NCBI GenBank assembly: GCA_024704765.1
Contig: JAKMXF010000277.1
Location: 248,001 to 312,000 of the forward strand
DNA: 64,000 nt
From: Oopsacas minuta
Lineage: Eukaryota > Animalia > Porifera
Reading direction: 5' to 3'
Positions 17,745 through 64,000 of the stretch are shown here, one piece after another. A program made the translations under genes and the position numbers. The notes below the pieces were generated by a model. That model saw only the letters and a program-made list of their open reading frames with translations. It searched no databases and had not been told where the DNA came from. The first letter of the stretch is position 1. Each line of letters opens with the position of its first letter.

Positions 17745-19275
17745 ATGAAGAGTAGAGCTAGTAGTATCTTAGCATGTGTTGGATTGTTTGTTGTGTATTT
17801 GATAGTAGTTGAGGCTGTCTGTTGGATAAACTGTCCTACTGAGTCAATTGGTTCATTAGAGCCCCTTCTGTTACCTGAATGATGATGGAGGTTCTATGTA
17901 TTGTGAGATTAGAGTGTATACATCTGGATTAAATGGACTGACTAATAATTGGACTCAAATCAAGCTAGTTATTAATGTAACAAATCGTATCAGGGAAATT
18001 GGGATCGATTCACGCTTGTCAGATTATCAGTTAGAAATAAATGCTTATCGTCAATTCAATAGTATAATAACTTTCACATCAAGTTCTAATAATCATATAG
18101 TATCACCATCGGTACTTACCTCACTTCCTAATCTTGTACACTTTTATATGTGGCGTGGAAACTTCTATCATTTTCCTATATTTTCACTTTTCAACAAACA
18201 ACTAACTCTTCTCGCTCTATATTCTTTCGGGATTCGATCAAATGCCCCAGTAATTAGAAGCCGCTTTGTGAGTCAATTACCCAATCTAGGATATCTCTAT
18301 CTCTATCCTAATAATATGTTGGTGGTAACTGAAAATATATTCTCAGGTCTCACTACTCTTAAATATTTGTACACTGAAAATTTGCAACTAAGATATCCAA
18401 TCAGAACACTATCTCCACTCGTTAGGCTGAAAAGATTGAGTATTCGTTACGCAGGTTTATCTGAAATAGATTTTCTAAAGCAAACTCCCTCGCTATACCA
18501 GTTAACCAGTATTAGTTTCTGGGGTAATAATATTCACTCATTTAACACTGATGTCTTCTCTGATTATACTCAATTAGAGAGTCTAGAATTGAAGACAAAC
18601 TTCATTGCTATTATAAACAGAACAAACGTTAATAAATTGTTCAATCTGGATTTTCTACGTCTTGGTTACAATCAAATATCAACAGTTCCTGAAGACTCAT
18701 TCAGAGATATGCCTCAACTTCGAATAGTTGCTTTATCTGACAATCAAATCACAACTATTTCTAGCAAAGTATTCGAGCATCTGTCTAACATTGAAAGAGT
18801 ATATTTGTCGAACAACCCATTTCATTGTGACTGTAGGTTAGAATGGATGTCAATTGTAAGTCACAAATACGATATAGATTTCGAAGATCCATCCTGCAAT
18901 ACTCCACCAGAACATAAAGGTAAATCAGTATTGTTACCATCTCTCTACACAAACTGTACTAGAGAGCTATCTTATCAGTGTTTCAACAAATCAGTTAAAT
19001 GTCCAAGAGGTTCTTACTGTCAGGATACACTACATAGCTATGAGTGTGTGTGTGAAGGAGAAGGAGTAGTTTTCTCCACCTCACTTAACAGCTGTATTGA
19101 CTATGAGAAACTCATACAAACAACAAAGTCGTTATGTGGAGAATATGTATTGGATAGTAATGGTCATTCGAACTGCACTCCATCAACCAATGTCGTTACT
19201 ACCCATGCGCCAACTTGTCCAGTACAACCTGTAACGGAAGCAGATAAAACTCCTACTAGTCTTCCTCCTATATAA
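17745..19275 (+). CDS. LRR-EGF protein family A, copy 1 (signal peptide, about 10 LRRs, LRRCT, EGF, Pro/Thr stalk); extra C at 17862-17865
   Basis: ATG 17745 (MKSRASSILAC) matches the paralogue at 26219. GAGCCCC here vs GAGCCC there shifts the frame. LxxLxLxxNxI repeats, NPFHCDCRLEW, EGF CPRGSYCQDTLHSYECVC. Confidence 0.85.
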
Positions 19276-20454
19276 CAAGTACTTCTTCCCATTAATCATA
19301 CTTATTGTAATATTTTATTGTTAGTTTTAGAGCTAATCAATTCTGGTGCAAACCATTGAGTATTGATAGACTTGAATTACTATAAGTATGATTCACGATG
19401 TGCTGATTGAGATTGGATGAATAGTTTCCTGCAAGGTATTTCAAGATTATTTGTTCGTTATTTGTGGTGAGTTAAGTATATATTTGTTCATTGTTATTCA
19501 AAATGTTGGTTATTCATCAAAAATATGTGGCATTTCTCTTTTCGTCAAATAATTGCATAAATATACTCAATACAATTTGAATGGAAAATTGACCGTGACA
19601 CATCTAAACCAAAGTCCGCAGAAATGATCCTTAAGAGCATAATAACAGAATGTGTATTCATTGGGCATAACTGCCAACCAAGCAGAGAATGCTAACCTAT
19701 TATGTCATATCCATGTACAGTGCCCTCATTTTCCAACCCCATAATTTTCCTCGCTCGATGAGCTCCTAGTCTTACACCAAAGATCAGTTACACTACATAC
19801 TAACAGCTATTTTGTGCACAGTGTGATTTTGTCTCTCCGAATCAGGTTTGTTATGGAACAGCTCATGCCAATTACAATGAATATGTTTCCTCAATAACGT
19901 ATGGAATCTAGTTTCAACCAAAAGAGTTATGAATCACGGACTGTTCAGGGAATCCTTGTACTGTTGAATATGAACTGCTAATTTACATAACTAAATGTGC
20001 ATGTATATGTATTATTAGACTCATAATTAGTCTCCACCAAAAATCCTTGTACATTTGTACTAACTCCCTGTACGCCTATACAGAACTAACAATGGGCAAA
20101 ATCCCTGTCCGGCTGGCAGGTAAGATTGAGTAGTTAGACTTTCTCTTCCAGGAGTGCTATAGGATGTTTAGAAATGATTGAAGATGGAAATATCTTCAAA
20201 TAACTTTTACGGTCTGATTGAACCATTTGTATTCATTTGATTAGATAAGTATTTGTATAAATATTCAAAAACTTGGCCAAAATCTATAATAATATTTGAA
20301 ATAACGGAAAAAATGTGAGGCAAATTGATTGCATTATAGACTGATTGAATTCTTGTATTATACTGAGTCAGGAGTTCATACATTTAGAACGTCATTGTGC
20401 CTAAAGATTGTTATAAAAGGCTGTAATTTGTATTTCAGTTCAACAGGCCTTACA

Positions 20455-45944: not shown

Positions 45945-47225
45945 TCACGAGAGGGTGAGATGGGGATAGATCGAATTACGAGAGGGTGAGATAGGGATAG
46001 ATCGTCCAATAGAAATGGTCTTTTTCAGAGGTATATGACTATTGAAATCAAAATAAAACCTAAGAAACAATGATTTCTCCGGCGTTATAAAGTTATTATA
46101 ATTATGCCGATACATTTTGTGGAATATTCCGCTTTCTCGCCAAGCCTTAAGATTAAAGTCCATTGATCTTTCTTCCCAACTCGAATTCGTGAAATCCAGC
46201 TTATCGACTACAACAGCAATGTATCGTGTAATAATTGGCTCTCCTGGATATTTGTGGATGTGTTCTACCCCATTCCTCTTAAGAGAGAAATTCATGTAAC
46301 CTGCATGATAACTCAAATGTATGTGACAGCTAATTTTGTCAATATAGAAAACAGGACTCAGCTCTGTGTAGCCATCACTTTGCTTTTTAACTTCCTTGAT
46401 TTCCCAATCAACTCCATCAAGTTGCTTCATTGCTCTTACCTGCATATTTAATCCAATTCGTTCTCTCTTCAATGACTTAATTTCTTGATTTTGCTGAGAT
46501 AATACAGCTAAAGTCATATCTATATGTTCTGAGGTGAAATATTTCTTGTGTTCAGTGAGGAACTGTCTTTGCATTGGATCTACCATACAGCCAAAATCAG
46601 CGAAAGGACATTTGATAAATTCTAATGGGCAATCTTCTTTATGATGAAATAGCTGTATACGAGGAAATTTCTTTCCACAAGTATTGGGACACAAAATAGG
46701 AAATTCTCTGCAAACATTCAAATGTTTATCCATTTCTAGAAATATTTGCATTTTACTACAGTAGACACATTCTATTTCTCGCATTGGGCAAATTATGTTA
46801 TTGTGTTTGTCTGTTTCTTGTCTTTCAAATATTTCTTTGCATTTTGAGCATTCAACCCGAAAGAATTCGCATATTTCCAAGTGTTCTCTAACTTCTGAGA
46901 ACTTTCCATTCCAACTGCAATCTCTAAAAAGTGGACATTTCACAATCAGTTTCGAAATTGAAATCTGTACTGTGTTCACAGAGTGAGACTGTAATGGAGA
47001 AGTACAACATACCGAACAGCTAGTTTCTCCATCTCTACAGCTAACAGCATCTCGCATAACTCCCAAACAAATCTTACACATAAGAAATTCTTCTTCTACA
47101 GAGTTGAGATTTTGAAGTAGAATTTCCCGCCTATATCCACAGTAGTGAACAACTCCAACCTTGCTTCTCTTCACAAAGAGCAATTCACTAGTGTCATCTG
47201 GTAGAATGTTTGCTTTTGAAGCCAT
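45945..47225 (-). CDS. TRAF-like protein copy 1 (degenerate RING, TRAF zinc fingers, coiled coil, MATH-like domain)
   Basis: CKICLGVMRDAV; repeated C-x2/3-C..H..C fingers; CPFADFGC; C-terminal beta-rich domain starting VDWEIKE. Confidence 0.85.
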   Translation of the reverse strand: MASKANILPDDTSELLFVKRSKVGVVHYCGYRREILLQNLNSVEEEFLMCKICLGVMRDAVSCRDGETSCSVCCTSPLQSHSVNTVQISISKLIVKCPLFRDCSWNGKFSEVREHLEICEFFRVECSKCKEIFERQETDKHNNIICPMREIECVYCSKMQIFLEMDKHLNVCREFPILCPNTCGKKFPRIQLFHHKEDCPLEFIKCPFADFGCMVDPMQRQFLTEHKKYFTSEHIDMTLAVLSQQNQEIKSLKRERIGLNMQVRAMKQLDGVDWEIKEVKKQSDGYTELSPVFYIDKISCHIHLSYHAGYMNFSLKRNGVEHIHKYPGEPIITRYIAVVVDKLDFTNSSWEERSMDFNLKAWRESGIFHKMYRHNYNNFITPEKSLFLRFYFDFNSHIPLKKTISIGRSIPISPSRNSIYPHLTLS

Positions 47226-47299
47226 TTTTTGAGAAATTCTACAGATACAATACTTTTCAAATATTATGATGTATTAATCTTATGGTTTAGTTAAAACTA

Positions 47300-47462
47300 C
47301 AGTCAACGCCGGTTAAATCGAAGCTCAAAAGACCGCGATAATTGTTTCTATAAGCTGAGTTCGATATATCCGAAATTCATGCTACTTTGGCGGTTTGGGA
47401 TCATATTTGTACAAGGTAGAGTTCGACTAAAGAGGGTATTTCGATTTAACCGGCGTTGACTG
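47300..47462. mobile_element. pogo/Tigger-type MITE at the palindrome centre
   Basis: 23-bp perfect TIR CAGTCAACGCCGGTTAAATCGAA, TA flanks, 117-bp unique core. Confidence 0.9.
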
Positions 47463-47536
47463 TAGTTTTAACTAAACCATAAGATTAATACATCATAATA
47501 TTTGAAAAGTATTGTATCTGTAGAATTTCTCAAAAA

Positions 47537-48799
47537 ATGGCTTCAAAAGCAAACATTCTACCAGATGACACTAGTGAATTGCTCTTTGTGAAGAGAAGCA
47601 AGGTTGGAGTTGTTCACTACTGTGGATATAGGCGGGAAATTCTACTTCAAAATCTCAACTCTGTAGAAGAAGAATTTCTTATGTGTAAGATTTGTTTGGG
47701 AGTTATGCGAGATGCTGTTAGCTGTAGAGATGGAGAAACTAGCTGTTCGGTATGTTGTACTTCTCCATTACAGTCTCACTCTGTGAACACAGTACAGATT
47801 TCAATTTCGAAACTGATTGTGAAATGTCCACTTTTTAGAGATTGCAGTTGGAATGGAAAGTTCTCAGAAGTTAGAGAACACTTGGAAATATGCGAATTCT
47901 TTCGGGTTGAATGCTCAAAATGCAAAGAAATATTTGAAAGACAAGAAACAGACAAACACAATAACATAATTTGCCCAATGCGAGAAATAGAATGTGTCTA
48001 CTGTAGTAAAATGCAAATATTTCTAGAAATGGATAAACATTTGAATGTTTGCAGAGAATTTCCTATTTTGTGTCCCAATACTTGTGGAAAGAAATTTCCT
48101 CGTATACAGCTATTTCATCATAAAGAAGATTGCCCATTAGAATTTATCAAATGTCCTTTCGCTGATTTTGGCTGTATGGTAGATCCAATGCAAAGACAGT
48201 TCCTCACTGAACACAAGAAATATTTCACCTCAGAACATATAGATATGACTTTAGCTGTATTATCTCAGCAAAATCAAGATATTAAGTCGTTGAAGAGAGA
48301 ACGAATTGAGTTGAATATGCAGATGAGAGCAATGAAGCAACTTGATGGAGTTGATTGGGAAATCAAGGAAGTTAAAAAACAAACTGATGGTTACACGGAA
48401 CAAAGTCCTGTTTTCAAAATTAACAAAATTAGCTGTCACATACATTTGAGTTACCATGCAGGCTACATTAATTTCTCTCTTAAGAGGAATGGGGTAGAAA
48501 ACATAAACAAATATCCAGGAGAGCCAATTATTACACGATACATTGCTGTTGTAGTTGATAAACTAGATTTCACGAATTCGAGTTGGGAAGAAAGATCAAT
48601 GGACTTTAATCTTAAGGCTTCACGAGAGAGCGGAATATTCCACAAAATGCATTGCTATAAATATCATAAATTTATAACGCCGGAGGAATCATTGTTTCTT
48701 ACGTTCTATTTTGATTTCGATAGTCTTATACCTCTCAAAAAAACAAAGTCCATCCGGCGATATATCCCTATCTCACCCTCTCGTAATTCATTAGTTTAA
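47537..48799 (+). CDS. TRAF-like protein copy 2
   Basis: First 247 aa identical to copy 1; C-terminal domain diverged. Confidence 0.85.
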   Translation: MASKANILPDDTSELLFVKRSKVGVVHYCGYRREILLQNLNSVEEEFLMCKICLGVMRDAVSCRDGETSCSVCCTSPLQSHSVNTVQISISKLIVKCPLFRDCSWNGKFSEVREHLEICEFFRVECSKCKEIFERQETDKHNNIICPMREIECVYCSKMQIFLEMDKHLNVCREFPILCPNTCGKKFPRIQLFHHKEDCPLEFIKCPFADFGCMVDPMQRQFLTEHKKYFTSEHIDMTLAVLSQQNQDIKSLKRERIELNMQMRAMKQLDGVDWEIKEVKKQTDGYTEQSPVFKINKISCHIHLSYHAGYINFSLKRNGVENINKYPGEPIITRYIAVVVDKLDFTNSSWEERSMDFNLKASRESGIFHKMHCYKYHKFITPEESLFLTFYFDFDSLIPLKKTKSIRRYIPISPSRNSLV

Positions 48800-50062: not shown

Positions 50063-51430
50063 CTATATCAACAACAACAACAACAAATAGAGGAGCAGGA
50101 GGAATGTAATTGCTTGAGATGTTAGCTTGTTGACACTTGAACATGTATACATATCAGAATCCAGAGTATATCCAGGATTACAAGAACAGCTGTAAGATCC
50201 TACAGTATTGGTGCATATTTGCGAACAGTTAATTGAGTTCAAAGAACATTCATCTATGTCAACACAGGTGTTAGTTTCAGTTTCAATTTGATATCCAGCT
50301 TCAATACATTCACAACCAGAACTGTTAACTACATTGAAACCATTGACACATGGAAAATAATTTTTCGTACAGTTTACATAGTTTGAAACATCAGTAAGGT
50401 TTTTGCCAGCTAAAGTGTTCGGTGTAGAACATTTCCCTGAAATTCCATTACGAAAACTTACAAGACTAACCCAAGAGAAATCGCAATTGCAATCAAATGG
50501 GTTATCTTGAGCATCAAGTGTAACGAGAGATTTCTGCCTCAGAAGGAATTCTCTGTTCAATGATGTTAACTTACAATCCTGTACAGATAATCTTGTTAAT
50601 TTCGGAAATGTGTAAGTGAGTAACAAATCCATATTAATTGAACCGTCAATAACTAGTGAGTGTAATTCATCTAATCCAGTAAAAGCATTAACTTCAAAAG
50701 TGGTATTCACAGAATCCACTCTTAGTTCCAAGTTAATCATATTTACCAGTTTAGAAAACTGATAACTGTTGTAATGACGGAGTCCATGTATAGTGAGCCA
50801 TTCAATACTTAAAGCATTGTCGAATGCATTATCAGCTAATGCAAACCATTCTGCATCATATGTCTGTGTTAAGGTCAGGAATAATAGTTTAGGTTGGTTT
50901 AACATTGATGGAGTGATTGTGATTACAGATGGGAGTTTGAGTGAATGAAATACGATATCATACAGTTCAGTACTGCTTAATACAGGGAATACATCGAAGT
51001 GAATATTAGTAAGATCAATAACAGGCAAGTTTGGGAAATCAGTTAAAAACTCCTCACTCACGTATAGAGGTTGAGATGATGAAATAGTTAAAATACTAAT
51101 ATCCGGTTGAGAATGATTGAATATGATTGAATTATTTCTTCCATCAATTTCTAAGTATAATTCCGTTACTCCACCAGAAATATCCAATATAAGTGTTTTG
51201 TTATCGATTCCATTGATATTAAAGTGAAATGAGAATGCCGCGATACTAATAGTTCTATATGTTGTACACTCGCTGAGTAGGTCACTAGCTATGTTTGCAT
51301 TACTAGTGGAAATGTCACAATATATTGCCGGTCTATAAAATGAACAGCTGATGTTATTGTCAATACAAGGATCTCCATTGATTGATTGACAGAATAATAT
51401 GAGAATTAAGACAGTATTAATCAATAGCAT
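50063..51430 (-). CDS. LRR-EGF-cbEGF protein family B, copy 4, probable GPI/TM anchor
   Basis: Signal peptide from ATG 51430; NPFDCNCDFSWV; cbEGF; hydrophobic tail. Confidence 0.88.
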   Translation of the reverse strand: MLLINTVLILILFCQSINGDPCIDNNISCSFYRPAIYCDISTSNANIASDLLSECTTYRTISIAAFSFHFNINGIDNKTLILDISGGVTELYLEIDGRNNSIIFNHSQPDISILTISSSQPLYVSEEFLTDFPNLPVIDLTNIHFDVFPVLSSTELYDIVFHSLKLPSVITITPSMLNQPKLLFLTLTQTYDAEWFALADNAFDNALSIEWLTIHGLRHYNSYQFSKLVNMINLELRVDSVNTTFEVNAFTGLDELHSLVIDGSINMDLLLTYTFPKLTRLSVQDCKLTSLNREFLLRQKSLVTLDAQDNPFDCNCDFSWVSLVSFRNGISGKCSTPNTLAGKNLTDVSNYVNCTKNYFPCVNGFNVVNSSGCECIEAGYQIETETNTCVDIDECSLNSINCSQICTNTVGSYSCSCNPGYTLDSDMYTCSSVNKLTSQAITFLLLLYLLLLLLI

Positions 51431-52128
51431 TGTTCTTCTTCTGCTCTGGTTAATACACATTTGAATATCTTTAGTTGAGAGAAAGGAATTACAGCTTTGG
51501 ATCCACTCGGTTAACACCCTGACTAAACTTTGGAACCCATTAATGTATAGTATATTAATATTTGGTATATCATTAATATAAAGCCGAAACGTGTGAAAAT
51601 ATTGTTAATTACATGCTAAACACCACTAAAACCAGTAATATTAATTGTATTCTCCGAAAATCTCGGAAACTATCTTCACTTACCATAATACCGACAACAT
51701 GTGGAGACCTAATCTCTAGCATCCTTATTGTACAGATATATAATTGTAATTGGAGATCATAAGCATATACCATAGATCAGAGAATATATTAAAGTAATGC
51801 AGACCAAATATGGACATATAGCTATAGGAATTAAGAATTAATATTAATAAATGAAGAACAGAGCAGTTATAAGAGGTGCTTAAAATTAAGAAGAGATAAA
51901 CAATAATAAATATGCAAATATCTATAAAACAGCCAAACATAAGGAAAAGTGGGTGTGCTTCACAATTACAAGCATGCAGTTTAGTATTATAAAGCTGTTC
52001 AAAGTAATATTAGGGGAGTCGAGTATTCCATTACAGGGGTAGAATCGGGAGTAGGGGTGTTCTAAAGTTGGGGGAGGGACCCATGTGGGATTCTATTCAG
52101 GGGGCCCTTGTGCACTATTCGGTTAGTA

Positions 52129-52705
52129 TTAACACAAGAGGAGACTAAGGAATGCAATTCTTGAGATTTTAGTCAATTGGCAACTCAAGTTCTGAACATG
52201 TAAATATATCAGAATCCAGAGTATATCCAGGATAACAATAACAGCTGTAAGATCCTACAGCATGGTACATATTTGTTGACAGTTATGTGTAGAAATAATA
52301 CATACATCTATGTCAACACAGGTGTTAGTTTCAGTTTCAATCTCATATCCAGCTTCATAACCTTCATTACATTCACAATCAGCACTGTTAACTGAATTCA
52401 AACATTGGTAGATGGAAATGGAGTGTTACTACAGTTTATATAGTTTGAGGAAGCAATAATTTTGTTGCCAGCTCAATTGCTCGGTGTAGAACATGTTCCA
52501 TAAATTATACTACTGTAATCTTTATATCACTAACAAAGGCTAGACTACAATTGCATTCAAGGGGATTAATTTGAACAATAATTGAATTGAGAGATTTCTG
52601 TCTAAGAAAGAAGTTCTTATTCAAAGTTGTTAACCCACAATCCTGTACAGTTATTTCCCTTAGCTTAGGAAATGTGTAATTGATAATATAATCAATAGCA
52701 ATCAC
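52129..52705 (-). pseudogene. LRR-B 3-prime relic (LRRCT-EGF-cbEGF) with stops and frameshifts
   Basis: YTFPKLREITVQDCGL..NPLECNCSLAFV, then a disrupted EGF region. Confidence 0.85.
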
Positions 52706-52941
52706 GATCTCAGATCATGTTTAACGAACAATCGTTATCGTTATCGCCATCGTTAATATAGCGATCAACTAATGCTAGTAAAGGCTTATGCAGTATAGGC
52801 TGACATGCTTTTTGAACGCGCGCTGTCACAATTGGCACATGTTGTCTATAGCTATATACATGCTTTATTAAGAAGAATTTGATGATAAATCTCGTTAATA
52901 CGAATTATTTTAAGTAGGATATATCATATTTTTCTACTTAT

Positions 52942-53055
52942 ATGATATGATGTAATATCCCATCGAATAACTAATGATATGATGTAATATCCCATCGAAT
53001 AACTAATGATATGATGTAATATCCCATCGAATAACTAATGATATGATGTAATATC
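52942..53055 (+). repeat. 32-bp VNTR, about 3.6 copies (ATGATATGATGTAATATCCCATCGAATAACTA)
   Basis: Exact repeats ending about 92 bp upstream of the UBL ATG. Confidence 0.95.
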
Positions 53056-53147
53056 GTATCTAATAGCTGGTAATAGGTCCAGTTATCACATATATATAAC
53101 CTGTAATACTTTACGATGCTCATTAACAATCTATCAGTTTTGCTAAG

Positions 53148-53831
53148 ATGGAGAGTATATTTATTGTTGGACTTGAAGGGAAAGTGAAAACTATTAATAT
53201 CGAAAAAGTTCGAATGAATGTAAGGCATATGTAAGGTTACTATAAAGAATACTGAGTATAGTTATACCCAATTGCAGAGATACCAACTCTGGTGCATTTT
53301 AGCCCCTCAAACTGTAAAATCTCACTGTTTTTGGTTCTTTAACAGTAATTTTACAGAGATCTCAAATCTCACAGATTCTTACTGTCAGTTTGATTTTGTT
53401 TGAGACTGGCATTTATGAAATTGTAAATTGATGGTTGCATATAATGTTCAACAATTTTAATGTATAAAGATGTGTTCTGTATATTAGTCCAGCTTTCATA
53501 ATCTAGAATCCACGCGAAATAAAGCAAAGGTTCTATAATACGCATAATATTTGTTTTCTGATATTGACTGTAGATCAAACGTATAATATCAAATTTCTGT
53601 CTATCCTCACACTGTATTGATCTGTATCTAATTTTATAGAACTACACTATTAAAGAGTTGAAATCTCAAGTATTCATAAGATGTGGGATAGAAGTTGAAG
53701 CTCAGAGACTGATCTACATCAGTAAAGACCTGGAGGTTGAAAGGAATGGCAAAGAGTTAACTCTAAGTGACTATGGAATCCATCGTGATTGTAATATTAT
53801 GCTGGTTGTGAGGTTACCTGGCGGCACATAG
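53148..53831 (+). CDS. Ubiquitin-like modifier copy 1; exons 53148-53219 and 53640-53831, 87 aa ending VRLPGG-T (absent from ORF track)
   Basis: MESIFIVGLEGKVKTINI joined by GTAAGG..TTTTATAG to NYTIKELK..QRLIYISKDLE..LSDYGI..LVVRLPGGT; colinear with the ubiquitin fold. Confidence 0.88.
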
Positions 53832-54558
53832 AGTTTAAATTAAGTGTACGTGAGTGTATTGATACTGTTTTCTATTATTCGTTGTATTTTTTTGTAACTT
53901 TCCTAAGTAATTACGTATATTTATTACTACCACGCAATTCTAAGATTCTCTCCAATACATATTTAGTCAAAATTTCAGACTCAGCTAATGGGGAGTGGCC
54001 TAGCCAATGCTAATCACTCAAATCATTTTGGTAAAACGCTCATTTTTGGGATTGGGTTGGACTCTATCGCAGATATATGTAGTAAGCCCTATTCATAGAG
54101 TATCGATCAAAGGCAGGTGGGTATTTTAAACGGGTTAAAGAGGGTTAAATGATGTGCACTTAACGCGCTTTGGGTGAAACACTAGGCCTTGCCATAAGAA
54201 GACAGCCAAAACCGTTTGTTTCTACCTGTTACTGCTGGGATTGTATAGGATGTGGGATTTACATACATTGTCCAGCAAAGAAATAGAAAAAACAGTTTCG
54301 TATGCTAGTTTACTATGCATTGGTTGCTCAACCCAAAACAACATCCTGCCGACCAAAAAGCCGACCAAGACCTAGGGGGGACATAGATGATAGATCACAA
54401 TATTTTCTTTATCTGCTCGATCGGGAATTAATTCGTAATTAAATAAAATCCATTTGTACTATTCAAATAAGTAAACATTCTATATCTTGATTAGTTTACA
54501 GTATTATTCTAGATATTTTCATATCTAATTCATAGCAAAACGTAATTGATTGTTCGAC

Positions 54559-55383
54559 ATGTGTGCTGCAAAAAACAATGCATTAGAAACACGGAGTGTG
54601 GAGATTTGGAATGTCAGGAAGGGAGGGGAGATGTGTTTTTGGCGAGATGAGACTAGAACAGTTTCATTTAAACATCCGACTAGTGAGTGTTGTACATGCT
54701 TCGATGATGATAGCGGGTTGGAAATGAGTTGTGAACATTACATATGTCCAGATTGTATCCTGAGACAGACATGGGTACAAATCCAACATCTAAAATTTGA
54801 AATAAGTTGTACAAAATGTCCCGCTATCATAAGTATTGAAGATATAATGAAGTTTGGACTGGCAGATTGTGAGGAAAAGCAATTCATAGAAACAGCGATT
54901 TCTGTCAATTTTTGTGAGAGTCAAGACATACAACAGTGTCCGAATTGTCAGAGTTATTGTCAACGAAAGAGATCTGACACAGCTCAGGTACAGTGCACTA
55001 TTTGTGCCAAAAAGTTGAATAAGAGCTTCGAATTTTGCTGGTTTTGTCTGAGAGAATGGAATAATCCAGTGAACTATCAAATCTGCGGCAATTTGAACTG
55101 CAAAAGAGAAGAAATTCAGAAACTACGAAATTCACCCAAAAAAGTATTCGGAGATAAAAAAGGAAAAGCTCTATCTATTCCTATTCTAAGAGCTTGTCCT
55201 AAGTGTTTTACTATAATTGAACATACAGAAGGATGTAACGAAATAACTTGTAAAGTTTGCAAAACAGCATTCTGCTTCATCTGCTTAGCAAGGACAAGAG
55301 AAGGGAGTTTAGTTTGTAGGGGGAGGACTTATACAAACATAACGTGTGTTCCTGCTCCTATTCAAACTAAATTGAGGTCGTAA
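54559..55383 (+). CDS. Compact RBR (RING1-IBR-RING2) E3 ligase copy 1, 274 aa
   Basis: RING1-like CCTC..CEHYICPDC..CTKC; IBR CPNC..CTIC..FCWFC; Rcat CPKC..IEHTEGCNEITCKVCKTAFCFICL. Confidence 0.85.
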   Translation: MCAAKNNALETRSVEIWNVRKGGEMCFWRDETRTVSFKHPTSECCTCFDDDSGLEMSCEHYICPDCILRQTWVQIQHLKFEISCTKCPAIISIEDIMKFGLADCEEKQFIETAISVNFCESQDIQQCPNCQSYCQRKRSDTAQVQCTICAKKLNKSFEFCWFCLREWNNPVNYQICGNLNCKREEIQKLRNSPKKVFGDKKGKALSIPILRACPKCFTIIEHTEGCNEITCKVCKTAFCFICLARTREGSLVCRGRTYTNITCVPAPIQTKLRS

Positions 55384-55826
55384 ATTTGAACTTTACATGT
55401 GTTTTGCTTTATTTAGCTTACTAGAATTGAGATTATTTGTTTTGGTTAGTTTTGTAAAACTTCATAGTTTGTTATTATTTTAAAAGAAGTTCACGATCAA
55501 TATTAGCCGATTGAAAGGGACATTATTGCAAAATGGTTTTAACTGTTCCAGCTAATTTCAGTCTGTATTGTACTTGTAAATCAGATATGTATTAAATTTC
55601 ATGTTTACTTTACTATGCTTTACTAGTGTATTAATTAATTAATGTCAACCCATATATCCTTTTGAGATATTTACAATATGTTGTTGTTGCTTGCTACAAA
55701 TCATACTTGTGCATAAAGAATTGAAATCGATTATATTTTATGTACATTAATATCGCTTTTGTTGCAAAGTACTTGTAGTTATACGTAATTTCCTCTACGC
55801 AGTTCAGTCACGGACATTTATGCTCA

Positions 55827-57850
55827 ATGGCTAATGATGAACGTAGACACCAATATTTTGTGTCTAAAGCAACGAAGCGACTAAAACGAGATCTGAAATT
55901 AATCCTCACTGATCCTATTCCAGCTATCGATGTAGCACCGAATGAAGACGATATTCTAGACTGGCATTTCGCTATACACGGTAAGAATGACACTCCATAC
56001 GAAAACGGTGTATACCATGGTAAGCTTGTGTTCCCTCCCAATTTTCCTTTTGGTCCACCTAAAATATTGTTCCTGACTCAAACGGGAGATTTGAAGTGAA
56101 CAAGAGGATTCGTTTCAGTCTGAGCGATTTCCACCCTGAAGAATGGAAGCCCGCATATTCAGTGACAGCTGTACTACGTGGTGTTTATGACTTTATGCAT
56201 GAATCGACTGAAACTATTGGAAGCATTAATTCTAGTGTAAGTGCTAGAAAGCAATTAGCTCTTGACAGTAGAGAATATAATCTCAAAAATGATACATTTT
56301 GTAGACTGTTTCCTAATATGATTCAAGATGATATGGGAAATGATGTAGATTCAGTTAGTCAAGACGAATCGAATCAAGGTAACAACGAGGTTGATTCGAG
56401 TGAGATTCCAGGGAGGATTGAAATGAATATAACACTAAAGACATATGCCACAACAAATCCTATTCCAGATCTTGGTACCAAAGTTCTACAGCATGGAACA
56501 ACTGATACAATTGATTCTCATCCTTCTACTCCTCAAAATCAAGATATTCTAGAAACAATTAATCCAAATTCTATTCCAGATCCTCAAAAACAGGAGGAAA
56601 CTAGAATCATAAATTCCCCAGAAAACGAGATATCCAATCCTCCCCTGAACCCCGAGACTCCAAAGTCAGAAGATGGAATCAGATTCACAACTATATTTCC
56701 ACCACCATTTAAGTCAGATATTAGCTCCGCCATTGAGCTTCAAGCAAGACAAACTCCTCCAATAAATGAACCAAATTCTCCAACACAGGATCAAGCTAAT
56801 ATTAATATTCACATCATAAACGAAATAAATGAAGTTCTGATTCCTCCAGAAAGATGTAATCCAAATTCTATTCTGAATCCTCAAAATCAAGAGGAAGCTA
56901 GAATCATAAATTCCCCAGAAAACGAGATATCCCGTCCTCCTCTAAACCCCGAGACTCCAGAGTCAGAAGATGGAATCAGATTCACAACTATATTTCCACC
57001 ACCATTTAAGTCAGATATTAGATCCACCATTGAGCTTCATGCAAGACAAACTCCTCCAATAAATGAAGATCTGATTCCTCTAGAAAGATGTAATTCTCCC
57101 TCAGTAAATAATGTGATGCCTCCAATGATAGACGAGAATATTCCTGCAGATAATGTAATCACTATACATACAGATACCGAGCTAAATGAAACTCTTACAA
57201 ATGATACTCCTACACAACCACCAGTTGGAATACCAATACCTCCTCCAGAAATGCCTTATAATACAGTTACATTACGAGAAGATTCTAATGCAGATCTCAA
57301 TAGCTCCTTAATAGCTACAAGTTCAGGCAGTCCTATAGGTATTCCTGTACCTCAGCCTTCGATAAAGCTCCCAGCGCAAGAGCCTGTTCGCCGTGCTCGT
57401 CCATTCAAAATATCACCAATATCACCTATACATTCTAGTTTATCACGAGAAAGGAATCCAAACTATAATCAACTTCCAGCATACGAAACACCACCACCCT
57501 ATTCACCTAAACAAATTTCCAATACCTCTATACAGCCGAATCCTTTAATGAATTATGCCATTGTTAATTCCCAGTATAATAATGCTGTTGTAATAGCGGA
57601 TTCAGCTCGAGTACCAAACAGAAAGAATCCTGCCAAAAGGCCAAGATCCATCCCCTTTATGTACAGAACGCAAAGTAGAAATCTTGGAGACATTGAAAAA
57701 GGAACTTTGCGGCAGGAGAGAAGTTACGAACTGCCAGAGATTAATCACCACGAAATTAACTGCTATTATATTGCATTACTTGTAATAGTAATCTTATCTG
57801 CTATTGGGCTTTTATATTTGTTTGCTCAACTGAAAATAAGCTTGAAGTAA
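55827..57850 (+). pseudogene. UBE2J2: UBE2J/Ubc6-type tail-anchored E2 copy 1; frameshift at 56079 and catalytic Cys-to-Arg
   Basis: ATKRLKRD..WHFAIHG..TPYENGVYHGKL. ACTCAAAC here vs ACTCCAAAC in copy 2. Active-site codon is CGT (56111-56113). Long Pro-rich linker and C-terminal TM helix. Confidence 0.8.
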
Positions 57851-58046
57851 TTGAGTGACTTCTCTTCTAGTTATATTAGAATGAATTTTAGAATATCTTT
57901 AGCGGAATATAGAAGATTTACACAATTTTTACAAAATACACAAATTCAGATCCTTAATACAAAATACATTACACATAACTATCATGAATAAATTCTTACA
58001 TCTCATTATAAATGTGAGTGCTAACTTTAAATTCTACGATGGCCTA

Positions 58047-58620
58047 ATCAAGTGTAACGAGAGATTTCTGTCTCAGAAGGAATTCTCTATTCAATAATGT
58101 TAACCTACAATCCTGTACAGATAATCTTGTTAATTTCGGAAATGTGTAAGTGACTAACAAATCCATATTAATTGAACCGTCAATAACTAGTGAGTGTAAT
58201 TCGTCTAATCCAGTAAAAGCATTAACTTCAAAAGTGGTATTCACAGAATCTACTATTAGTTCTAAATTAATCATATTTAACAGTTTAGAAAACTGATAAC
58301 TGTTGTAATGACGGAGTCCATGTATAGTGAGCCATTCAATACTTAAAGCATTGTCGAATGCATTATCAGCTAATGCAAACCATTCTGCATCATATGTCTG
58401 TGTTAAGGTCAGGAATAATAGTTTAGGTTGGTTTAACATTGATGGAGTGATTGTGATTACAGATGGGAGTTTGAGTGAATGAAATACGATATCATACAGT
58501 TCAGTACTGCTTAATACAGGGAATACATCGAAGTGAATATTAGTAAGATCAATAACAGGCAAGTTTGGGAAATCAGTTAAAATTCCTCACTCAGGTATAG
58601 AGGTTGAGATGATGAAATAG
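58047..58620 (-). pseudogene. Internal fragment of LRR-B4
   Basis: Near-identical to 50513-51085. The 5-prime end was removed by a deletion at GTTAA microhomology; the 3-prime end is cut by the duplication breakpoint. Confidence 0.9.
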
Positions 58621-59144
58621 TTAATTACATGCTAAACACCACTAAATCCAGAAATATTAATTGTATTCTCCGAACATCTCGGAAACTATCTTCACTCACC
58701 ATAATACCGACAACATGTGGAGACCTAATCTCTAGCATCCTTATTGTACAGATATATAATTGTAATTGGAGATCATAAGCATATACCATAGATCAGAGAA
58801 TATATTAAAGTAATGCAGACCAAATATGGACATATAGCTATAGGAATTAAGAATTAATATTAATAAATGAAGAACAGAGCAGTTATAAGAGGTGCTTAAA
58901 ATTAAGAAGAGATAAACAATAATAAATATGCAAATATCTATAAAACAGCCAAACATAAGGAAAAATGGGTGTGCTTTACAATTACAAGTATGCAGTTTAG
59001 TATTATAAAGCTATTCAAAGTAATATTAGGGGAGTCGAGTATTCCATTACAGGGGTAGAATCGGGAGTAGGGGTGTTCTAAAGTTGGGGAGGGACCCCAT
59101 GTGGGATTCCATTCAGAGGGGCCCGGTGCACTATTCAGTTAGTA

Positions 59145-59722
59145 TTAACACAAGAGGAGAATAAAGAATACAATTCCTTGAGATTTTAGTCAATTGGCAA
59201 CTCAAGTTCTGAACATGTAAATATATCAGAATCCAGAGTATATCCAGGATAACAATAACAGCTGTAAGATCCTACAGCATGGTACATATTTGTTGACAGT
59301 TATGTGTAGAAATAATACATACATCTATGTCAACACAGGTGTTAGTTTCAGTTTCAATCTCATATCCAGCTTCATAACCTTCATTACATTCACAATCAGC
59401 ACTGTTAACTGAATTCAAACATTGGTAGATGGAAATGGAGTGTTACTACAGTTTATATAGTTTGAGGAAGCAATAATTTTGTTGCCAGCTCAATTGCTCG
59501 GTGTAGAACATGTTCCATAAATTATACTACTGTAATCTTTATATCACTAACAAAGGCTAGACTACAATTGCATTCAAGGGGATTAATTTGAACAATAATT
59601 GAATTGAGAGATTTCTGTCTAAGAAAGAAGTTCTTATTCAAAGTTGTTAACCCACAATCCTGTACAGTTATTTCCCTTAGCTTAGGAAATGTGTAATTGA
59701 TAATATAATCAATAGCAATCAC
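59145..59722 (-). pseudogene. LRR-B 3-prime relic, duplicate of 52129-52705
   Basis: Near-identical to the unit 1 copy. Confidence 0.85.
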
Positions 59723-59958
59723 GATCTCAGATCATGTTTAACGAACAATCGTTATCGTTATCGCCATCGTTAATATAGCGATCAACTAATGCTAGTAAAG
59801 GCTTATGCAGTATAGGCTGACATGCTTTTTGAACGCGCGCTGTCACAATTGGCACATGTTGTCTATAGCTATATACATGCTTTATTAAGAAGAATTTGAT
59901 GATAAATCTCGTTAATACGAATTATTTTAAGTAGGATATATCATATTTTTCTACTTAT

Positions 59959-60136
59959 ATGATATGATGTAATATCCCATCGAATAACTAATGATATGAT
60001 GTAATATCCCATCGAATAACTAATGATATGATGTAATATCCCATCGAATAACTAATGATATGATGTAATATCCCATCGAATAACTAATGATATGATGTAA
60101 TATCCCATCGAATAACTAATGATATGATGTAATATC
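59959..60136 (+). repeat. 32-bp VNTR, about 5.6 copies
   Basis: Same unit as 52942, with two extra copies. Confidence 0.95.
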
Positions 60137-60228
60137 GTATCTAATAGCTGGTAATAGGTCCAGTTATCACATATATATAACCTGTAATACTTTACGATGC
60201 TCATTAACAATCTATCAGTTTTGCTAAG

Positions 60229-60856
60229 ATGGAGAGTATATTTATTGTTGGACTTGAAGGGAAAGTGAAAACTATTAATATCGAAAAAGTTCGAATGAAT
60301 GTAAGGCATATGTAAGGTTACTATATAGAATACTGAGTATAGTTATACCCAATTGCAGAGATACCAACTCTCGTGCATTTTAGCCGCTCAAACTGAAAAT
60401 CTCACTGTTTTTGGTTCCTTAACAGTAATTTTTAGCAGAGATGTCAAATCTCACAGATTCTTACTGTCTGTTTGGCTTTTGTTTGAGGCTATAGATTGGA
60501 ATTTATGAAATTGTAAATGTATGATTGCATATAATGTTCAACAATTTTAATATATTAAAATGTGTTCTGTATATTAGTCCAGCTTTCATAACCTAGAATC
60601 CATGGGGAATTTAGCGAAGGTCTGTCTATTTTCGAACTGTATTGATCTGTATCTAATTTTATAGAACTACACTATTAAAGAGTTGAAATCTCAAGTATTC
60701 ATAATATGTGGGATAGAAGTTGATGCTCAGAGACTGATCTACACCACTAAAGACCTGGAGGTTCAAAGGAATGGCAAAGAGTTAACTTTAAGTGACTATG
60801 GAATCCATGGTAATTGTAATATTATGCTGGTTGTGAGGCTACCTGGCGACACATAG
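60229..60856 (+). CDS. Ubiquitin-like modifier copy 2; exons 60229-60300 and 60665-60856; ends RLPGD-T (di-Gly lost)
   Basis: Same splice sites as copy 1; GGC changed to GAC at 60848-60850. Confidence 0.85.
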
Positions 60857-61200
60857 AGTTGAATTTACATGTACGTGAGTGTTTGAGACTGTTTTATAAC
60901 ATTTACTCTAATTTCTATTATTCACTAACTTCCTTAGTAATTACGTGTGGTATATTCCATTATTTTGAGATATTCTCAAAAATTGTACATATATTGTATA
61001 TGATGTATTTTGTCAAAATATAAACTCGGCCGATAGAAAGCCTTGCCCAAACACATTTGCATTATTTTATGGACTGGGTTGGAATTAATTATTGCAATTA
61101 AGCTATATCTACCATATACCCACATACGATATCAGGATCCTAGACAACCTTTCATAAGTGGGGCTTAAGAAATATAGTGGAGGGGATTATTTCTTATTGG

Positions 61201-61283
61201 CAGGGTTGCCGTAGGAATTCCCATAGAATTTCCTGTGAGAATGGGATAGGAATGAGGATTGAATTCCGTTCCCATGACAACCG
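61201..61283. mobile_element. Small MITE (CAGGGTTGCC..TTCCCATGACAACC); related sequence near 39600-39700
   Basis: Imperfect TIRs with internal GGGAAT repeats; absent from unit 1. Confidence 0.5.
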
Positions 61284-61337
61284 TACATATTAGCCAATGG
61301 CCATATAGGTAAATTAATAGTAGAAAAAGGGCTTAAG

Positions 61338-62023
61338 CAGGGGCGTCGGAAGCTGGTATTTTCATGGGAGGATTTAATGATGTGAATGCATGAATAATAA
61401 CACTCAATTTAGTAATCTAGATAGTCTAAATTAGAGCTTTGGCAATCTCCCAAACTTACTTCACGGTGTTAAGTATTTATGGACATTTGTAATTTTTGAA
61501 AATATAAACTGTAGTATATTCATTGCTTATATATTACTAGTGTAGTTGGTAATCAGCAGCCAATGAAACAAATGGAAAATTACTTTTTAACAAGCTTTGT
61601 TGTTAGTAGTAAATTATTACTATAAATGTGAGGTGCCAATTAACAACTAGATAATATGAAGATATAACTCCAGCAGGCTTCAACCAATGACTGGATGTGT
61701 GAGGTTTTTGTTGAAAAACTTCCCAACTGGCAACAACATGATAATATGAAAATAACTATAAACAAACTATGAAGGGGTGAGATAATACCCTCAAGGGGAT
61801 AACCCCCATCGTAGTTGGTTTATAATTATTTTCAAACAAGTATTGAGGATGCCGATCCGGGGTGTAAACTATTGTACATGATATCCCTCCTAAATTGGCA
61901 GAATGTTCTAATAAATTCGAAAATAATTAAATACTCACTCACAATTATAGGGGGGATTATCCCCCTCTGTCTAAATCATGGGGGGGATGAGTACCCCCAT
62001 CCCCCTCACTTCCGACGCCCCTA
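61338..62023. mobile_element. Non-autonomous hAT element, 686 bp
   Basis: TIR CAGGGGCGTCGGAAG / CTTCCGACGCCCCTA and perfect 8-bp TSD GGCTTAAG; absent from unit 1. Confidence 0.85.
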
Positions 62024-62142
62024 GGCTTAAGCCCCCAAGCCCCCTCCCTTGTCTACGGCCTTGGATATATATATATTAAACTAAGATATTTTCCTCTATC
62101 ATCTGGATATTTGTAAATTGAATTCATAGAAAATATTTCCTG

Positions 62143-62964
62143 ATGTGTGCTGCAAAAGAAAGTGCATTAGACACACGTATGGTAAAGATCTGAGATGTGA
62201 GGAAGGCAGGAGATATGTATTTTATCAGAGACGAGACCAGAACTGTTTCATTTACCCATCCGACTGGTGAATGTTGTGTCTGCTATGACGATAGTGGATT
62301 AAAAATGCGCTGTGGACATTACATATGTCCAGATGATATCCTACTCAATACGTGGGAACAAATCCAACATCTAAAATTTGAAGTAAGTTGTCCAAGCTGC
62401 CCTGCTATCATAAGTATTGAAGATATTATGAAATTTGGACTGCCAGATTGCGAGGAAAAGCAATTCATAGAAGCAGCGATTTCCGTCAATTTCTGTGAGA
62501 GTCAAGACATACAACAGTGCCCGAATTGTCAGAGTTATTGTCAACGAAAGAAAACTGACACAGCTCAGGTACAGTGCACTATTTGTACCAAAAATATGAA
62601 AAAGAGTTTCGAATTTTGCTGGTTTTGTCTGAGAGAATGGAATAACGCAGCTAACTATCAAATTTGTGGCAATTTGAACTGCAAAAGAGAAGAAATTCAG
62701 AAACTACGAAATTCACCCAAAAAAGTATTCCGAGATGATGGAGGAAAAGTTCTATCTATTCCTATTCTAAGAGCATGTCCTAAGTGTTTTACTATAATTG
62801 AACACACAAAGGGATGTAACGAAATGACTTGTAAAGTTTGCAAAACAGCATTCTGCTTCATCTGCTTAGCAAAGACAGAAGAAGGGAGTTTAGTTTGCAG
62901 TGGGAGGACTTACACAGCCATAACATGTGTCGCTGCTCCTATTCAAACTAAATTGAGGTCGTAA
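62143..62964 (+). pseudogene. Compact RBR E3 copy 2 with a nonsense codon at position 17 (re-initiation at ATG 62215 possible)
   Basis: TGA at 62191-62193 replaces TGG of copy 1; RING1 reads CPDD instead of CPDC; IBR and Rcat intact. Confidence 0.75.
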
Positions 62965-63406
62965 ATTTGAACTTTACATGTGTTTTGCTTTATTTAGCTT
63001 ACTAGAATTGAGATTATTTGTTTTGGTTAGTTTTGTAAAACTTCATAGTTTGTTATTATTTTAAAAGAAGTTCACGATCAATATTAGCCGATTGAAAGGG
63101 ACATTATTGCAAAATGGTTTTAACTGTTCCAGCTAATTTCAGGCTGTATTGTACTTTTAAATTAGATATGTATTAAATTTCATGTTTACTTTACTATGCT
63201 TTACTAGTGTATTAATTAATTAATGTCAACCCATATATCCTTTTGAGATATTTACAATATGTTGTTGTTTCCGCTACAAATCATACTTGTGCATAAGAGA
63301 ATTGAAATCGATTATATTTTATGTATATTAATATAGCTTTTTGTTGCAGAGTACTTGTAGCTATAGGTAATTTCCTCTACGTGGTTCAGTCACGGACATA
63401 TGCTCA

Positions 63407-64000
63407 ATGGCTGATGATGAACGTAGACACCAATATTTTCTGTCTCGAGCAACGAAGCGACTGAAACGAGATCTGAAATTAATCCTCACTGATCCTATTC
63501 CAGCTATCGATGTAGCACCGAATGAAGACGATATTCTAGACTGGCATTTCGCTATACACGGTAAGAATGACACTCCATACGAAAACGGTGTATACCATGG
63601 TAAGCTCGTGTTCCCTCCCAATTTTCCTTTTGGTCCACCTAAAATATTGTTCCTGACTCCAAACGGGAGATTTGAAGTGAACAAGAGGATTTGTTTCAGT
63701 CTGAGCGATTTCCACCCTGAAGAATGGAAGCCCGCATATTCAGTGACAGCTGTACTACGTGGTGTTTATGACTTTATGCATGAATCGACTGAAACTATTG
63801 GAAGCATTAATTCTAGTGTAAGTGCTAGAAAGCAATTAGCTCTTGACAGTAGAGAATATAATCTCAAAAATGATACATTTTGTAGACTGTTTCCTAATAT
63901 GATTCAAGATGATATGGGAAATGATGTAGATTCAGTTAGTCAAGACGAATCGAATCAAGGTAACAACGAGGTTGATTCGAGTGAGATTCCAGGGAGGATT
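63407..64000 (+). CDS. UBE2J2: UBE2J/Ubc6-type E2 copy 2, UBC domain intact, runs off the window
   Basis: Open for 198 codons; FLTPNGRFEVNKRICFSLSDFHPEEW with Cys TGT at 63692-63694. Confidence 0.88.
   Translation, partial: MADDERRHQYFLSRATKRLKRDLKLILTDPIPAIDVAPNEDDILDWHFAIHGKNDTPYENGVYHGKLVFPPNFPFGPPKILFLTPNGRFEVNKRICFSLSDFHPEEWKPAYSVTAVLRGVYDFMHESTETIGSINSSVSARKQLALDSREYNLKNDTFCRLFPNMIQDDMGNDVDSVSQDESNQGNNEVDSSEIPGRI

What the first reader, a model, noticed from the sequence alone, without database searches (positions are those of the whole stretch)
53148..57850. Operon-like UBL - RBR E3 - E2 cassette: candidate dedicated ubiquitin-like conjugation system
Three same-strand genes within 4.7 kb encode a modifier, an E3 and an E2. 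The 87-aa UBL is missed by the ORF track because it is split by an intron. It is clearly not ubiquitin, NEDD8 or SUMO. It keeps the Ile44 and Lys48 equivalents and Arg72 (the known ubiquitin-E1 determinant), has Pro for Arg74 and a 4-aa insertion, and has a one-residue extension after GG that implies protease maturation. No E1 is in the window. Location in a defence-like cluster suggests an ISG15/FAT10-like inducible modifier acting at membranes through a tail-anchored E2. Functional coupling is inferred from adjacency only.
Basis: partly seen in the sequence, partly recalled or inferred. Interest (0 to 1): 0.88.

Follow-up and report, generated by a model that had tools for sequence, protein, structure and literature searches.

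The report
Ubiquitin-like tag, ligase, E2 cluster
A glass sponge keeps a small ubiquitin-like tag gene beside its own ligase and a membrane-anchored E2, and in corals, clams and amphioxus the same tag is fused to that ligase, which points to an undescribed protein-tagging pathway; the E2 at the reported coordinates is broken.

Summary
The three genes are real. The 87-aa ubiquitin-like gene (UBL, 53148-53219 + 53640-53831) is spliced exactly as proposed: an RNA-like run holds the GT..AG joint. The RBR ligase (54559-55383) is intact. The UBE2J2-type, tail-anchored E2 (55827-57850) is broken in this copy by a 1-nt deletion near 56079 and a catalytic Cys-to-Arg change at 56111. The intact, expressed form matches a second tandem unit (60229 to the window end), whose UBL ends GD and whose RBR has an early stop.

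The window is Oopsacas minuta. UBL-RBR adjacency recurs in two more loci of this genome and in four other assemblies, and the E2 is adjacent in four of those six loci. All nine of their UBLs, like copy 1 here, end RxxGG plus a variable 1-6 aa tail.

The RBR belongs to an unnamed animal family (226 representatives at E <= 1e-30). In many members (Acropora, bivalves, amphioxus) the same UBL is fused to the N-terminus and still ends in GG.

My reading is a modifier precursor with its cognate RBR E3, and the E2 as likely partner. Conjugation itself is untested. No E1 lies in the window, and an inducible or defence role is not shown. I found no description in the literature searched. Other notes from this scan report the same module elsewhere in this genome.

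The parts
53148..53219 (+). UBL exon 1 (24 codons, MESIFIVGLEGK...)
   Evidence: start and exon end conserved in relatives
53220..53639 (+). UBL intron, GT..AG, 420 nt
   Evidence: joint 53219->53640 in run X4, depth 1968
53640..53831 (+). UBL exon 2 with stop; ends ...VVRLPGG-T*
   Evidence: Pfam PF00240 8e-9; 43% identical to ubiquitin
54559..55383 (+). RBR E3 (274 aa): RING1 (C3HC4, CPDC), IBR, Rcat with catalytic Cys226, C-terminal APIQT motif
55827..56078 (+). E2 (UBE2J2 type), 5' part of the UBC core up to the frameshift
   Evidence: Pfam UQ_con 1.4e-15; alignment with copy 2
56078..56113 (+). Lesions of copy 1: one C missing at 56078/56079 (Pro codon) and CGT (Arg) at 56111-56113 in place of the catalytic TGT (Cys)
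   Evidence: Reads: contigs of X2-X4 carry the extra C, all four runs carry T at 56111, and the X1 contig lacks the extra C
56081..57850 (+). E2 3' part in the shifted frame: rest of the UBC core, Pro/Ser/Asn-rich linker with a 297-nt internal repeat (56548-57067), tail-anchor TM 57770-57826, stop
60229..60856 (+). Tandem copy 2 UBL (exon 1 60229-60300, exon 2 60665-60856), ends LPGDT*; this is GenBank LOD99_3633
62143..62964 (+). Tandem copy 2 RBR, in-frame stop at codon 17 (62191-62193); RING1 has the family-typical CPDD
63407..64000 (+). Tandem copy 2 E2: intact frame, catalytic Cys present, runs off the window end

Best explanation
This is a conserved gene module of glass sponges, present here as two tandem units.

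It encodes three things: (1) a ubiquitin-derived modifier precursor, a single beta-grasp domain ending RLPGG plus a short removable tail; (2) its cognate small RBR-type E3; and (3) a tail-anchored UBE2J2/Ubc6-type E2.

Proposed mechanism. A protease trims the tail to expose Gly-Gly. An E1 encoded elsewhere activates the UBL; this is probably the general ubiquitin E1, because the Arg72 equivalent is kept. The UBL is passed to the membrane-anchored E2, and RING1 of the RBR binds the charged E2. The UBL then moves to the Rcat cysteine (Cys226) and on to substrates at the cytosolic face of the ER or another membrane.

In cnidarians, bivalves and amphioxus the modifier is made as an N-terminal fusion to the same RBR. 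There it would be released by cleavage after GG, as ubiquitin is released from its ribosomal-protein fusions.

Shown: gene structures, splicing, expression, domain identities, conserved GG, conserved linkage and the fusion. Inferred: processing, choice of E1, E2-RBR pairing and conjugation. In this window only a mixture of the two units could supply all three parts.
For: - Splice joint and expression.
- UBL to ubiquitin 43% identity, with the hydrophobic patch and R72 kept.
- GG plus a variable 1-6 aa tail in 10 of 11 sponge UBL genes.
- UBL immediately upstream of an RBR in L001 (three times), L002, L003 (twice), L004 (twice), L005 and L012.
- A J2-type E2 adjacent in L002, L003, L004 and L012.
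- The RBR family has 226 representatives at <= 1e-30. 42 of the best 150 carry an N-terminal UBL, and 38 of about 40 complete UBL ends are RxxGG. G80 and G81 are invariant in 17 fused proteins.
- The fusions are real transcripts in Acropora.
- In the AF2 model of the Acropora fusion, the GG and the following linker (residues 80-88) are the only low-confidence stretch between two well-modelled domains.
- The catalytic Cys of Rcat and the zinc ligands are invariant.
- RBR copy 1 against copy 2: dS 0.31, omega 0.31, so there has been long purifying selection.
- All E2 paralogues except window copy 1 keep the catalytic Cys and a membrane anchor.
Against: - There is no biochemical evidence of any kind.
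- No E1 or protease lies in the cluster.
- RBR ligases are not known to pair with UBE2J2 (my knowledge).
- L001 has three UBL-RBR pairs but no E2 within 20 kb. Pecten has no neighbouring E2. Amphioxus has a different, UBE2D-like E2 next door.
- Each unit in this window carries a lesion.
- UBL copy 1 against copy 2 gives omega about 1.1, though on only 10 changes.
- The J2-type E2s of the cassettes may simply be the species' general ER E2.
Confidence: 0.5

Rival explanations
1. The UBL and RBR are a functional pair, but the UBL is never conjugated. It acts as a regulatory or pseudo-donor subunit that binds the RBR, as the Ubl of Parkin does or as allosteric ubiquitin does in HOIP, HOIL-1 and RNF216. 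In sponges it has been split off as a separate polypeptide. The LRLxGG tail is kept because it fits the donor-ubiquitin groove of the RBR.
For: The N-terminal UBL + RBR architecture of the fused relatives is the Parkin/HOIL-1 layout. RING1 of the fused members has lost half of its zinc ligands, which suggests unusual E2 handling. There is no E1 or protease in the cluster.
Against: The stand-alone sponge UBLs carry short tails after GG that vary in length and sequence, the mark of processed precursors. To my knowledge regulatory UBL domains such as those of Parkin and HOIL-1 do not keep GG, whereas here GG is nearly invariant across phyla.
Confidence: 0.22
2. Only the UBL and RBR belong together. 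The E2 is the organism's ordinary ER-associated UBE2J2/Ubc6 enzyme working with ubiquitin, and it sits next to the pairs by descent and tandem amplification, not by function.
For: The E2 core is a clear UBE2J2/Ubc6 member. The search found no other J2-type E2 named for this species. L001 lacks an E2 within 20 kb. Outside sponges the J2-type E2 is not the neighbour.
Against: The E2 is adjacent in four of the six other loci, from three other assemblies and a second contig of this genome, in both gene orders. It is amplified together with the pairs, and it diverges fast for a housekeeping E2: 67-79% identity among glass-sponge copies, with variable linkers and anchors.
Confidence: 0.2
3. In this window the module is a decaying duplicate array: non-functional remnants of a family whose working members lie elsewhere in the genome.
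For: Copy 1 E2 has a frameshift and Cys->Arg. Copy 2 UBL has GG->GD and copy 2 RBR has a stop at codon 17. UBL omega is about 1.1.
Against: One lesion-free copy of each gene remains. All three genes are covered well above intron and intergenic depth in the RNA-like run, and the expressed E2 form is the intact one. RBR omega is 0.31. The long E2 ORF of 584 codons stays open behind the frameshift.
Confidence: 0.08

Closest known systems
Ubiquitin and its natural fusion precursors (UBA52, RPS27A; FUBI-S30)
   Same: Beta-grasp domain 43% identical to ubiquitin. L8/I44/V70 patch, K11, K27, K48, R42, R72 and the L-x-G-G end are kept. It is made with a C-terminal extension (sponges) or as an N-terminal fusion to another protein (other phyla).
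   Different: Two loop insertions (4 and 5 aa), R74 to Pro, and K6, K29, K33 and K63 lost. The fusion partner is an E3 ligase, not a ribosomal protein. Sequence varies widely among paralogues (51-71% identity to this UBL across the related loci), unlike ubiquitin.
Parkin and HOIL-1 (UBL + RBR ligases)
   Same: N-terminal ubiquitin-like domain followed by RING1-IBR-Rcat in the fused relatives. The RBR fold is shared.
   Different: No RING0 (Parkin) and no NZF (HOIL-1). The UBL here keeps Gly-Gly and in sponges is a separate gene with its own stop. Identity to either RBR is only 17-20%.
RNF217, RNF144A/B, ARIH1/2, RNF19 (minimal and Ariadne RBRs)
   Same: Best fold and sequence matches: Foldseek probability 1.0, and ARIH1 Rcat at 1e-5 by sequence. 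The small size is like RNF144 and RNF217.
   Different: At most 25% identity, with no one family clearly nearest. Family-specific features are Asp at RING1 ligand 6 (CPDD), IEH before the catalytic Cys and a C-terminal APIQT motif. There is no TM segment on the E3.
UBE2J2 / yeast Ubc6 (tail-anchored ER E2)
   Same: UBC core 1.8e-52 to human UBE2J2 with the TPNGRF...C.S.SDFHP signature. C-terminal tail anchor.
   Different: About 670 aa against about 260, because of a repeat-containing low-complexity linker. Some paralogues replace the TM with a Cys-rich end. The copy at the reported coordinates lacks the catalytic Cys and is frameshifted.
ISG15 (with UBE2L6) and FAT10 (with UBA6/USE1)
   Same: A ubiquitin-derived modifier with a precursor tail (ISG15) and a candidate preferred E2. 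The comparison draws on my own knowledge of those systems.
   Different: Those are tandem double-UBL proteins of vertebrates, while this is a single domain. No dedicated E1 was seen, and induction was not tested.

Membership tests
Conjugatable (type I) ubiquitin-like modifier | Ubiquitin-family beta-grasp domain | tested here: met
   Pfam PF00240 8e-9 on exon 2; 43% identity to ubiquitin over 74 positions
Conjugatable (type I) ubiquitin-like modifier | C-terminal Gly-Gly, free or followed by a removable extension | tested here: met
   LPGG-T* in copy 1. GG plus a 1-6 aa tail in all 9 homologues of other loci. Copy 2 has GD
Conjugatable (type I) ubiquitin-like modifier | Activated by an E1, carried as a thioester by an E2, found attached to substrates | not testable with these tools
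   Needs biochemistry or proteomics
RBR (RING1-IBR-Rcat) E3 ligase | RING1 with a full set of zinc ligands | tested here: met
   C-x2-C...C-x-H-x2-C-x2-C...C-x2-C in copy 1. Paralogues have Asp at ligand 6
RBR (RING1-IBR-Rcat) E3 ligase | IBR and Rcat domains with a catalytic cysteine | tested here: met
   Pfam IBR 4e-8 and IBR_1 6.5e-7; invariant C226 in ...GCNE...; Foldseek probability 1.0 to ARIH1/2, RNF144A and RNF217
UBE2J2/Ubc6 E2 | UBC core of J2 type | tested here: met
   2f4w 1.8e-52, Ubc6 1.6e-46
UBE2J2/Ubc6 E2 | Catalytic cysteine in an intact reading frame | tested here: not met
   Copy 1 (the reported gene) has a 1-nt deletion and CGT (Arg) at 56111-56113. The feature is met in copy 2 and in all relatives
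UBE2J2/Ubc6 E2 | C-terminal transmembrane tail anchor | tested here: met
   IALLVIVILSAIGLLYLFA, mean hydropathy 2.9, ending 7 residues before the C-terminus; the same in L002 and L003
Parkin | RING0 domain between the UBL and RING1; orthology to Parkin | tested here: not met
   No room and no match for RING0. Parkin chains are only 17-20% identical and rank below ARIH
ISG15 / FAT10 | Two tandem ubiquitin-like domains | tested here: not met
   Single domain of 87 aa
Unnamed metazoan UBL(GG)-RBR family (Acropora, bivalves, amphioxus; annotated 'ARIH1-like', 'polyubiquitin', 'DDB_G0292642-like') | RBR with IEH-x3-C catalytic motif and C-terminal APIQT, associated with a GLEGK...RLxGG UBL | tested here: met
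   Profile search and alignment. In sponges the UBL is a neighbouring gene, not a fused domain

The most novel reading that the evidence does not exclude
The UBL is a true, so far unrecognised protein modifier of animals. It is encoded next to its own RBR ligase in glass sponges and fused to it in cnidarians, molluscs and cephalochordates. It is released by cleavage after Gly-Gly and attached to targets by that ligase, and in sponges it is delivered at membranes by a UBE2J2-type E2.
Probability: 0.4. Interest if true: 0.9.

Novelty: new variant of a known kind. Interest (0 to 1): 0.72.

Why it matters
New ubiquitin-like modifiers are rare finds. This would be a family in which the tag and its ligase are genetically tied together, by fusion in several phyla and by tight linkage in glass sponges, so each names its likely partner. 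That makes the pathway directly testable with a handful of recombinant proteins. It would also be a second natural use of the principle of making the tag as a cleavable fusion, beyond the ribosomal-protein fusions. The link to a UBE2J2-type E2, an enzyme known for membrane-proximal and non-lysine ubiquitination, and the position among amplified LRR, TRAF and ART genes suggest a membrane-associated signalling or immune role in early-branching animals. That role is not shown here.

Tried and rejected
1. UBL exons as 5' exons of the RBR (a Parkin-like single gene, as in GenBank model P0018). Rejected: every sponge locus has a stop 1-6 codons after GG, including the locus of P0018 itself (LPGGNKYY*). 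The reads gave no joint from the UBL to the RBR.
2. The copy-2 RING1 Cys->Asp as a lesion. Rejected: CPDD is the family norm and copy 1's CPDC is the exception.
3. The copy-1 frameshift as a pure assembly error. Not settled. Contigs of X2-X4 carry the extra C, and none of the four runs shows the Arg codon. The X1 contig lacks the extra C while carrying the Cys codon. Contigs collapse near-identical copies, so they cannot settle it.
4. L004 and L005 as another species. Corrected: the window itself is Oopsacas minuta, so these are paralogous loci of the same genome. Cross-sample support rests on the four ENA assemblies, whose species I could not name.
5. NCBIfam scan: empty, as expected for eukaryotic proteins.
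6. Seven literature searches found nothing on this family. Subscription journals are not covered.
7. Full reconstruction of the amphioxus neighbour E2: only the first and last exons were found.
Full report
**What is at the coordinates**

Three same-strand genes lie in 4.7 kb. The UBL starts at 53148. Exon 1 ends at 53219 before GTAAGG, and exon 2 starts at 53640 after TTTTATAG and ends LPGGT-stop at 53831. Exon 2 alone matches Pfam ubiquitin at 8e-9.

The RBR is a single 274-codon exon, 54559-55383, with Pfam IBR and IBR_1 matches.

The E2 starts at 55827 (UQ_con 1.4e-15). It does not read through: the frame breaks after codon 84 and continues in another frame to 57850.

**A second tandem unit and the lesions**

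A repeat search shows that the whole region is duplicated in tandem with an offset of 7.0-7.6 kb. Aligning the two E2 starts shows two changes in copy 1:
- It lacks one C of the Pro codon in ...LTPNGRF... at 56078/56079.
- It has CGT (Arg) at 56111-56113, where copy 2 has the catalytic TGT (Cys).

Copy 2 has its own defects. Its UBL ends LPGDT, and its RBR has a stop at codon 17. Its RING1 'Cys to Asp' is not a defect, because CPDD is the rule in the family.

This agrees with the scan's note s1-226667. The reported cassette therefore has a good UBL, a good RBR and a broken E2. The neighbouring unit has the reverse pattern.

Divergence between the units is mosaic, which indicates an old duplication partly homogenised by gene conversion:

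| Gene | dS | omega |
|---|---|---|
| RBR | 0.31 | 0.31 |
| E2 | 0.02 | 0.47 (7 changes) |
| UBL | 0.04 | about 1.1 (10 changes only) |

Some stretches of 300 nt are 100% identical.

**Reads**

Four runs from one sample hold the region.

X4 carries TruSeq adaptor remnants. Its depth runs from 0 upstream of the E2 to 936-1602 over UBL exon 2, 153-279 over most of the RBR coding region and 500-2800 over the E2, against 15-45 over the intron and spacers. It behaves like RNA. It contains a contig joining 53219 to 53640 (GT..AG) at depth 1968.

No joint links the UBL to the RBR. All four runs show T (Cys) at 56111, and X2-X4 show the extra C, so the intact E2 form is the one assembled and expressed. 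One X1 contig lacks the extra C.

These are assembler contigs, which collapse near-identical copies, so absence of the copy-1 variants is not proof.

**Organism**

The copy-2 UBL is letter for letter GenBank 'hypothetical protein LOD99_3633 [Oopsacas minuta]'. It sits on a contig of 566,867 bp, the same length as the contig of the window's own RBR proteins. The window is therefore the glass sponge Oopsacas minuta, and an independent annotation uses the same two-exon model.

**Identity of the parts**

- UBL: 43% identical to ubiquitin. L8, I44, V70, K11, K27, K48, R42 and R72 are kept. R74 is Pro, and K6, K29, K33 and K63 are lost. There are insertions of 4 and 5 residues.
- E2 core: matches human UBE2J2 at 1.8e-52 and yeast Ubc6 at 1.6e-46, far above other E2s at 1e-17. 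It ends in a tail anchor with mean hydropathy 2.9. A 400-residue low-complexity linker with a 297-nt repeat lies in between.
- RBR: matches solved structures only weakly by sequence (ARIH1 Rcat 1e-5). Its AF2 model (pLDDT 72.5) is recognised as an RBR with probability 1.0, but with no more than 25% identity to RNF217, RNF144A, ARIH1/2 or RNF19B. It is a separate RBR subfamily.

**Linkage**

| Locus | Source | Gene order |
|---|---|---|
| L004 | same genome | RBR<-UBL<- E2-> UBL->RBR-> |
| L005 | same genome | UBL->RBR on an 8-kb contig |
| L001 | ENA assembly | three UBL->RBR pairs, no E2 within 20 kb |
| L002 | ENA assembly | RBR, UBL, RBR, E2 (571 aa, tail-anchored), then a TRAF gene |
| L003 | ENA assembly | UBL, RBR, UBL, RBR, E2 (547 aa) |
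| L012 | ENA assembly | E2 (230 aa), UBL, RBR |

The four ENA assemblies come from other samples. None of them holds the window's exact RBR protein.

Every UBL has the same two-exon layout and ends R-x-x-G-G followed by 1-6 unrelated residues and a stop. The GenBank model P0018, which fuses the UBL and RBR, skips such a stop and is an artefact.

**The wider family**

A profile of the RBR finds 226 cluster representatives at E <= 1e-30. Named members come from Acropora, Ruditapes, Mercenaria, Pecten, Solemya, Branchiostoma and a fish. Their labels are only automatic ones such as 'ARIH1-like', 'polyubiquitin' and 'DDB_G0292642-like'.

Of the best 150 representatives, 42 carry an N-terminal ubiquitin-family domain, and 38 of about 40 complete UBL ends read RxxGG followed by a linker. 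In 17 aligned fusions both glycines are invariant.

The fusions share the GLEGK motif of the sponge UBL. In Acropora they occur as continuous ORFs in transcript contigs from three runs.

The AF2 model of the Acropora protein has confident UBL and RBR parts, joined by a low-confidence GG-linker at residues 80-88.

Amphioxus has three tandem fusion genes beside a divergent UBE2D-like E2.

**Reading**

Gene fusion in some lineages and tight linkage in another is classical evidence that two proteins work together. Near-invariant Gly-Gly in front of either a variable tail or a flexible linker is what is expected of a modifier released by a protease. It is not expected of a purely regulatory UBL domain.

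I therefore read the UBL and RBR as modifier and cognate ligase (about 0.5 for real conjugation). The UBE2J2-type E2 is the likely but less certain donor. The alternative is that it is the species' general ER E2, since the search found no other J2-type E2 named for this species.

The defence or inducible idea rests only on neighbours: LRR-EGF, two TRAF-type genes and an ART gene in the window, and TRAF or caspase-NHL genes in relatives.

**Novelty**

Seven full-text searches found no description. The components are of known kinds, but the modifier family and its fusion or linkage to its own RBR appear undescribed.

Other notes of this scan (s1-309840, s1-304929, s1-304981) report the same module elsewhere in this genome. 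I did not check those places, except that s1-309840 resembles L004.

Noticed in passing
window 50513-64000: The tandem unit (offset 7.0-7.6 kb) also carries an LRR-EGF membrane-protein gene on the minus strand (50063-51517; partial copy 58044-58562) and fragments of a second one (52.1-52.8 kb and 59.2-59.9 kb). Divergence between the units is mosaic, from 100% identical 300-nt blocks to RBR dS of 0.6 in its first third, which suggests repeated gene conversion.
   Followed up: partly
L011 (Branchiostoma lanceolatum CM068847.1) 1-19414: Three tandem UBL-RBR fusion genes, each ...VVLRL(P/Q)GGS. A divergently oriented 151-aa E2 lies at 3329-9287. Its first exon matches UBE2D1 only at about 1e-5, so it is a divergent E2 paralogue. 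This may be a second case of an E2 recruited next to this family.
   Followed up: partly
P0032, P0034, P0035, P0036 (E2 paralogues in ENA assemblies); P0031 (L004): Short J2-type E2 paralogues (230-260 aa) have no transmembrane tail. They end instead in Cys-rich motifs (..FCCFK, ..LCCLI, ..FCPCIS, ..LCFCLCCIK), which may be lipid anchors replacing the tail anchor.
   Followed up: no
L005 / protein P0018 (Oopsacas minuta KAI model, 399 aa): The GenBank model joins the UBL to the RBR by splicing out the GG-tail-stop. The genome reads LPGGNKYY* there, so the 'fusion' in this species is an annotation artefact.
   Followed up: yes
window 45945-48799; L002 20420-20822; L012 16384-18075: Two TRAF-type zinc-finger genes lie in a head-to-head palindrome just upstream of the cassette. 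A TRAF-type gene follows the E2 in L002, and a caspase (Peptidase_C14)-NHL gene lies near the cassette in L012.
   Followed up: no
window 55884-56630 (run X1): One contig combines the copy-1 deletion (no extra C at 56078) with the copy-2 letters at 56027 and 56111 (Cys codon). It is either a third haplotype or copy, or a chimeric assembler path.
   Followed up: no
window 56548-57067: A 297-nt direct repeat (92% identical) inside the E2 linker encodes a duplicated 99-aa Pro/Asn/Glu-rich block (...INSPENEIS.PPLNPETP.SEDGIRFTTIFPPPFKSDI...). Its read depth in the RNA-like run is the highest of the region.
   Followed up: no
alignment A3: The fused, non-sponge members have a degenerate RING1 (…MxCGHAIxPExL…) that lacks the first Cys pair and the CPDC/D pair. 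The sponge members keep a full RING1.
   Followed up: no
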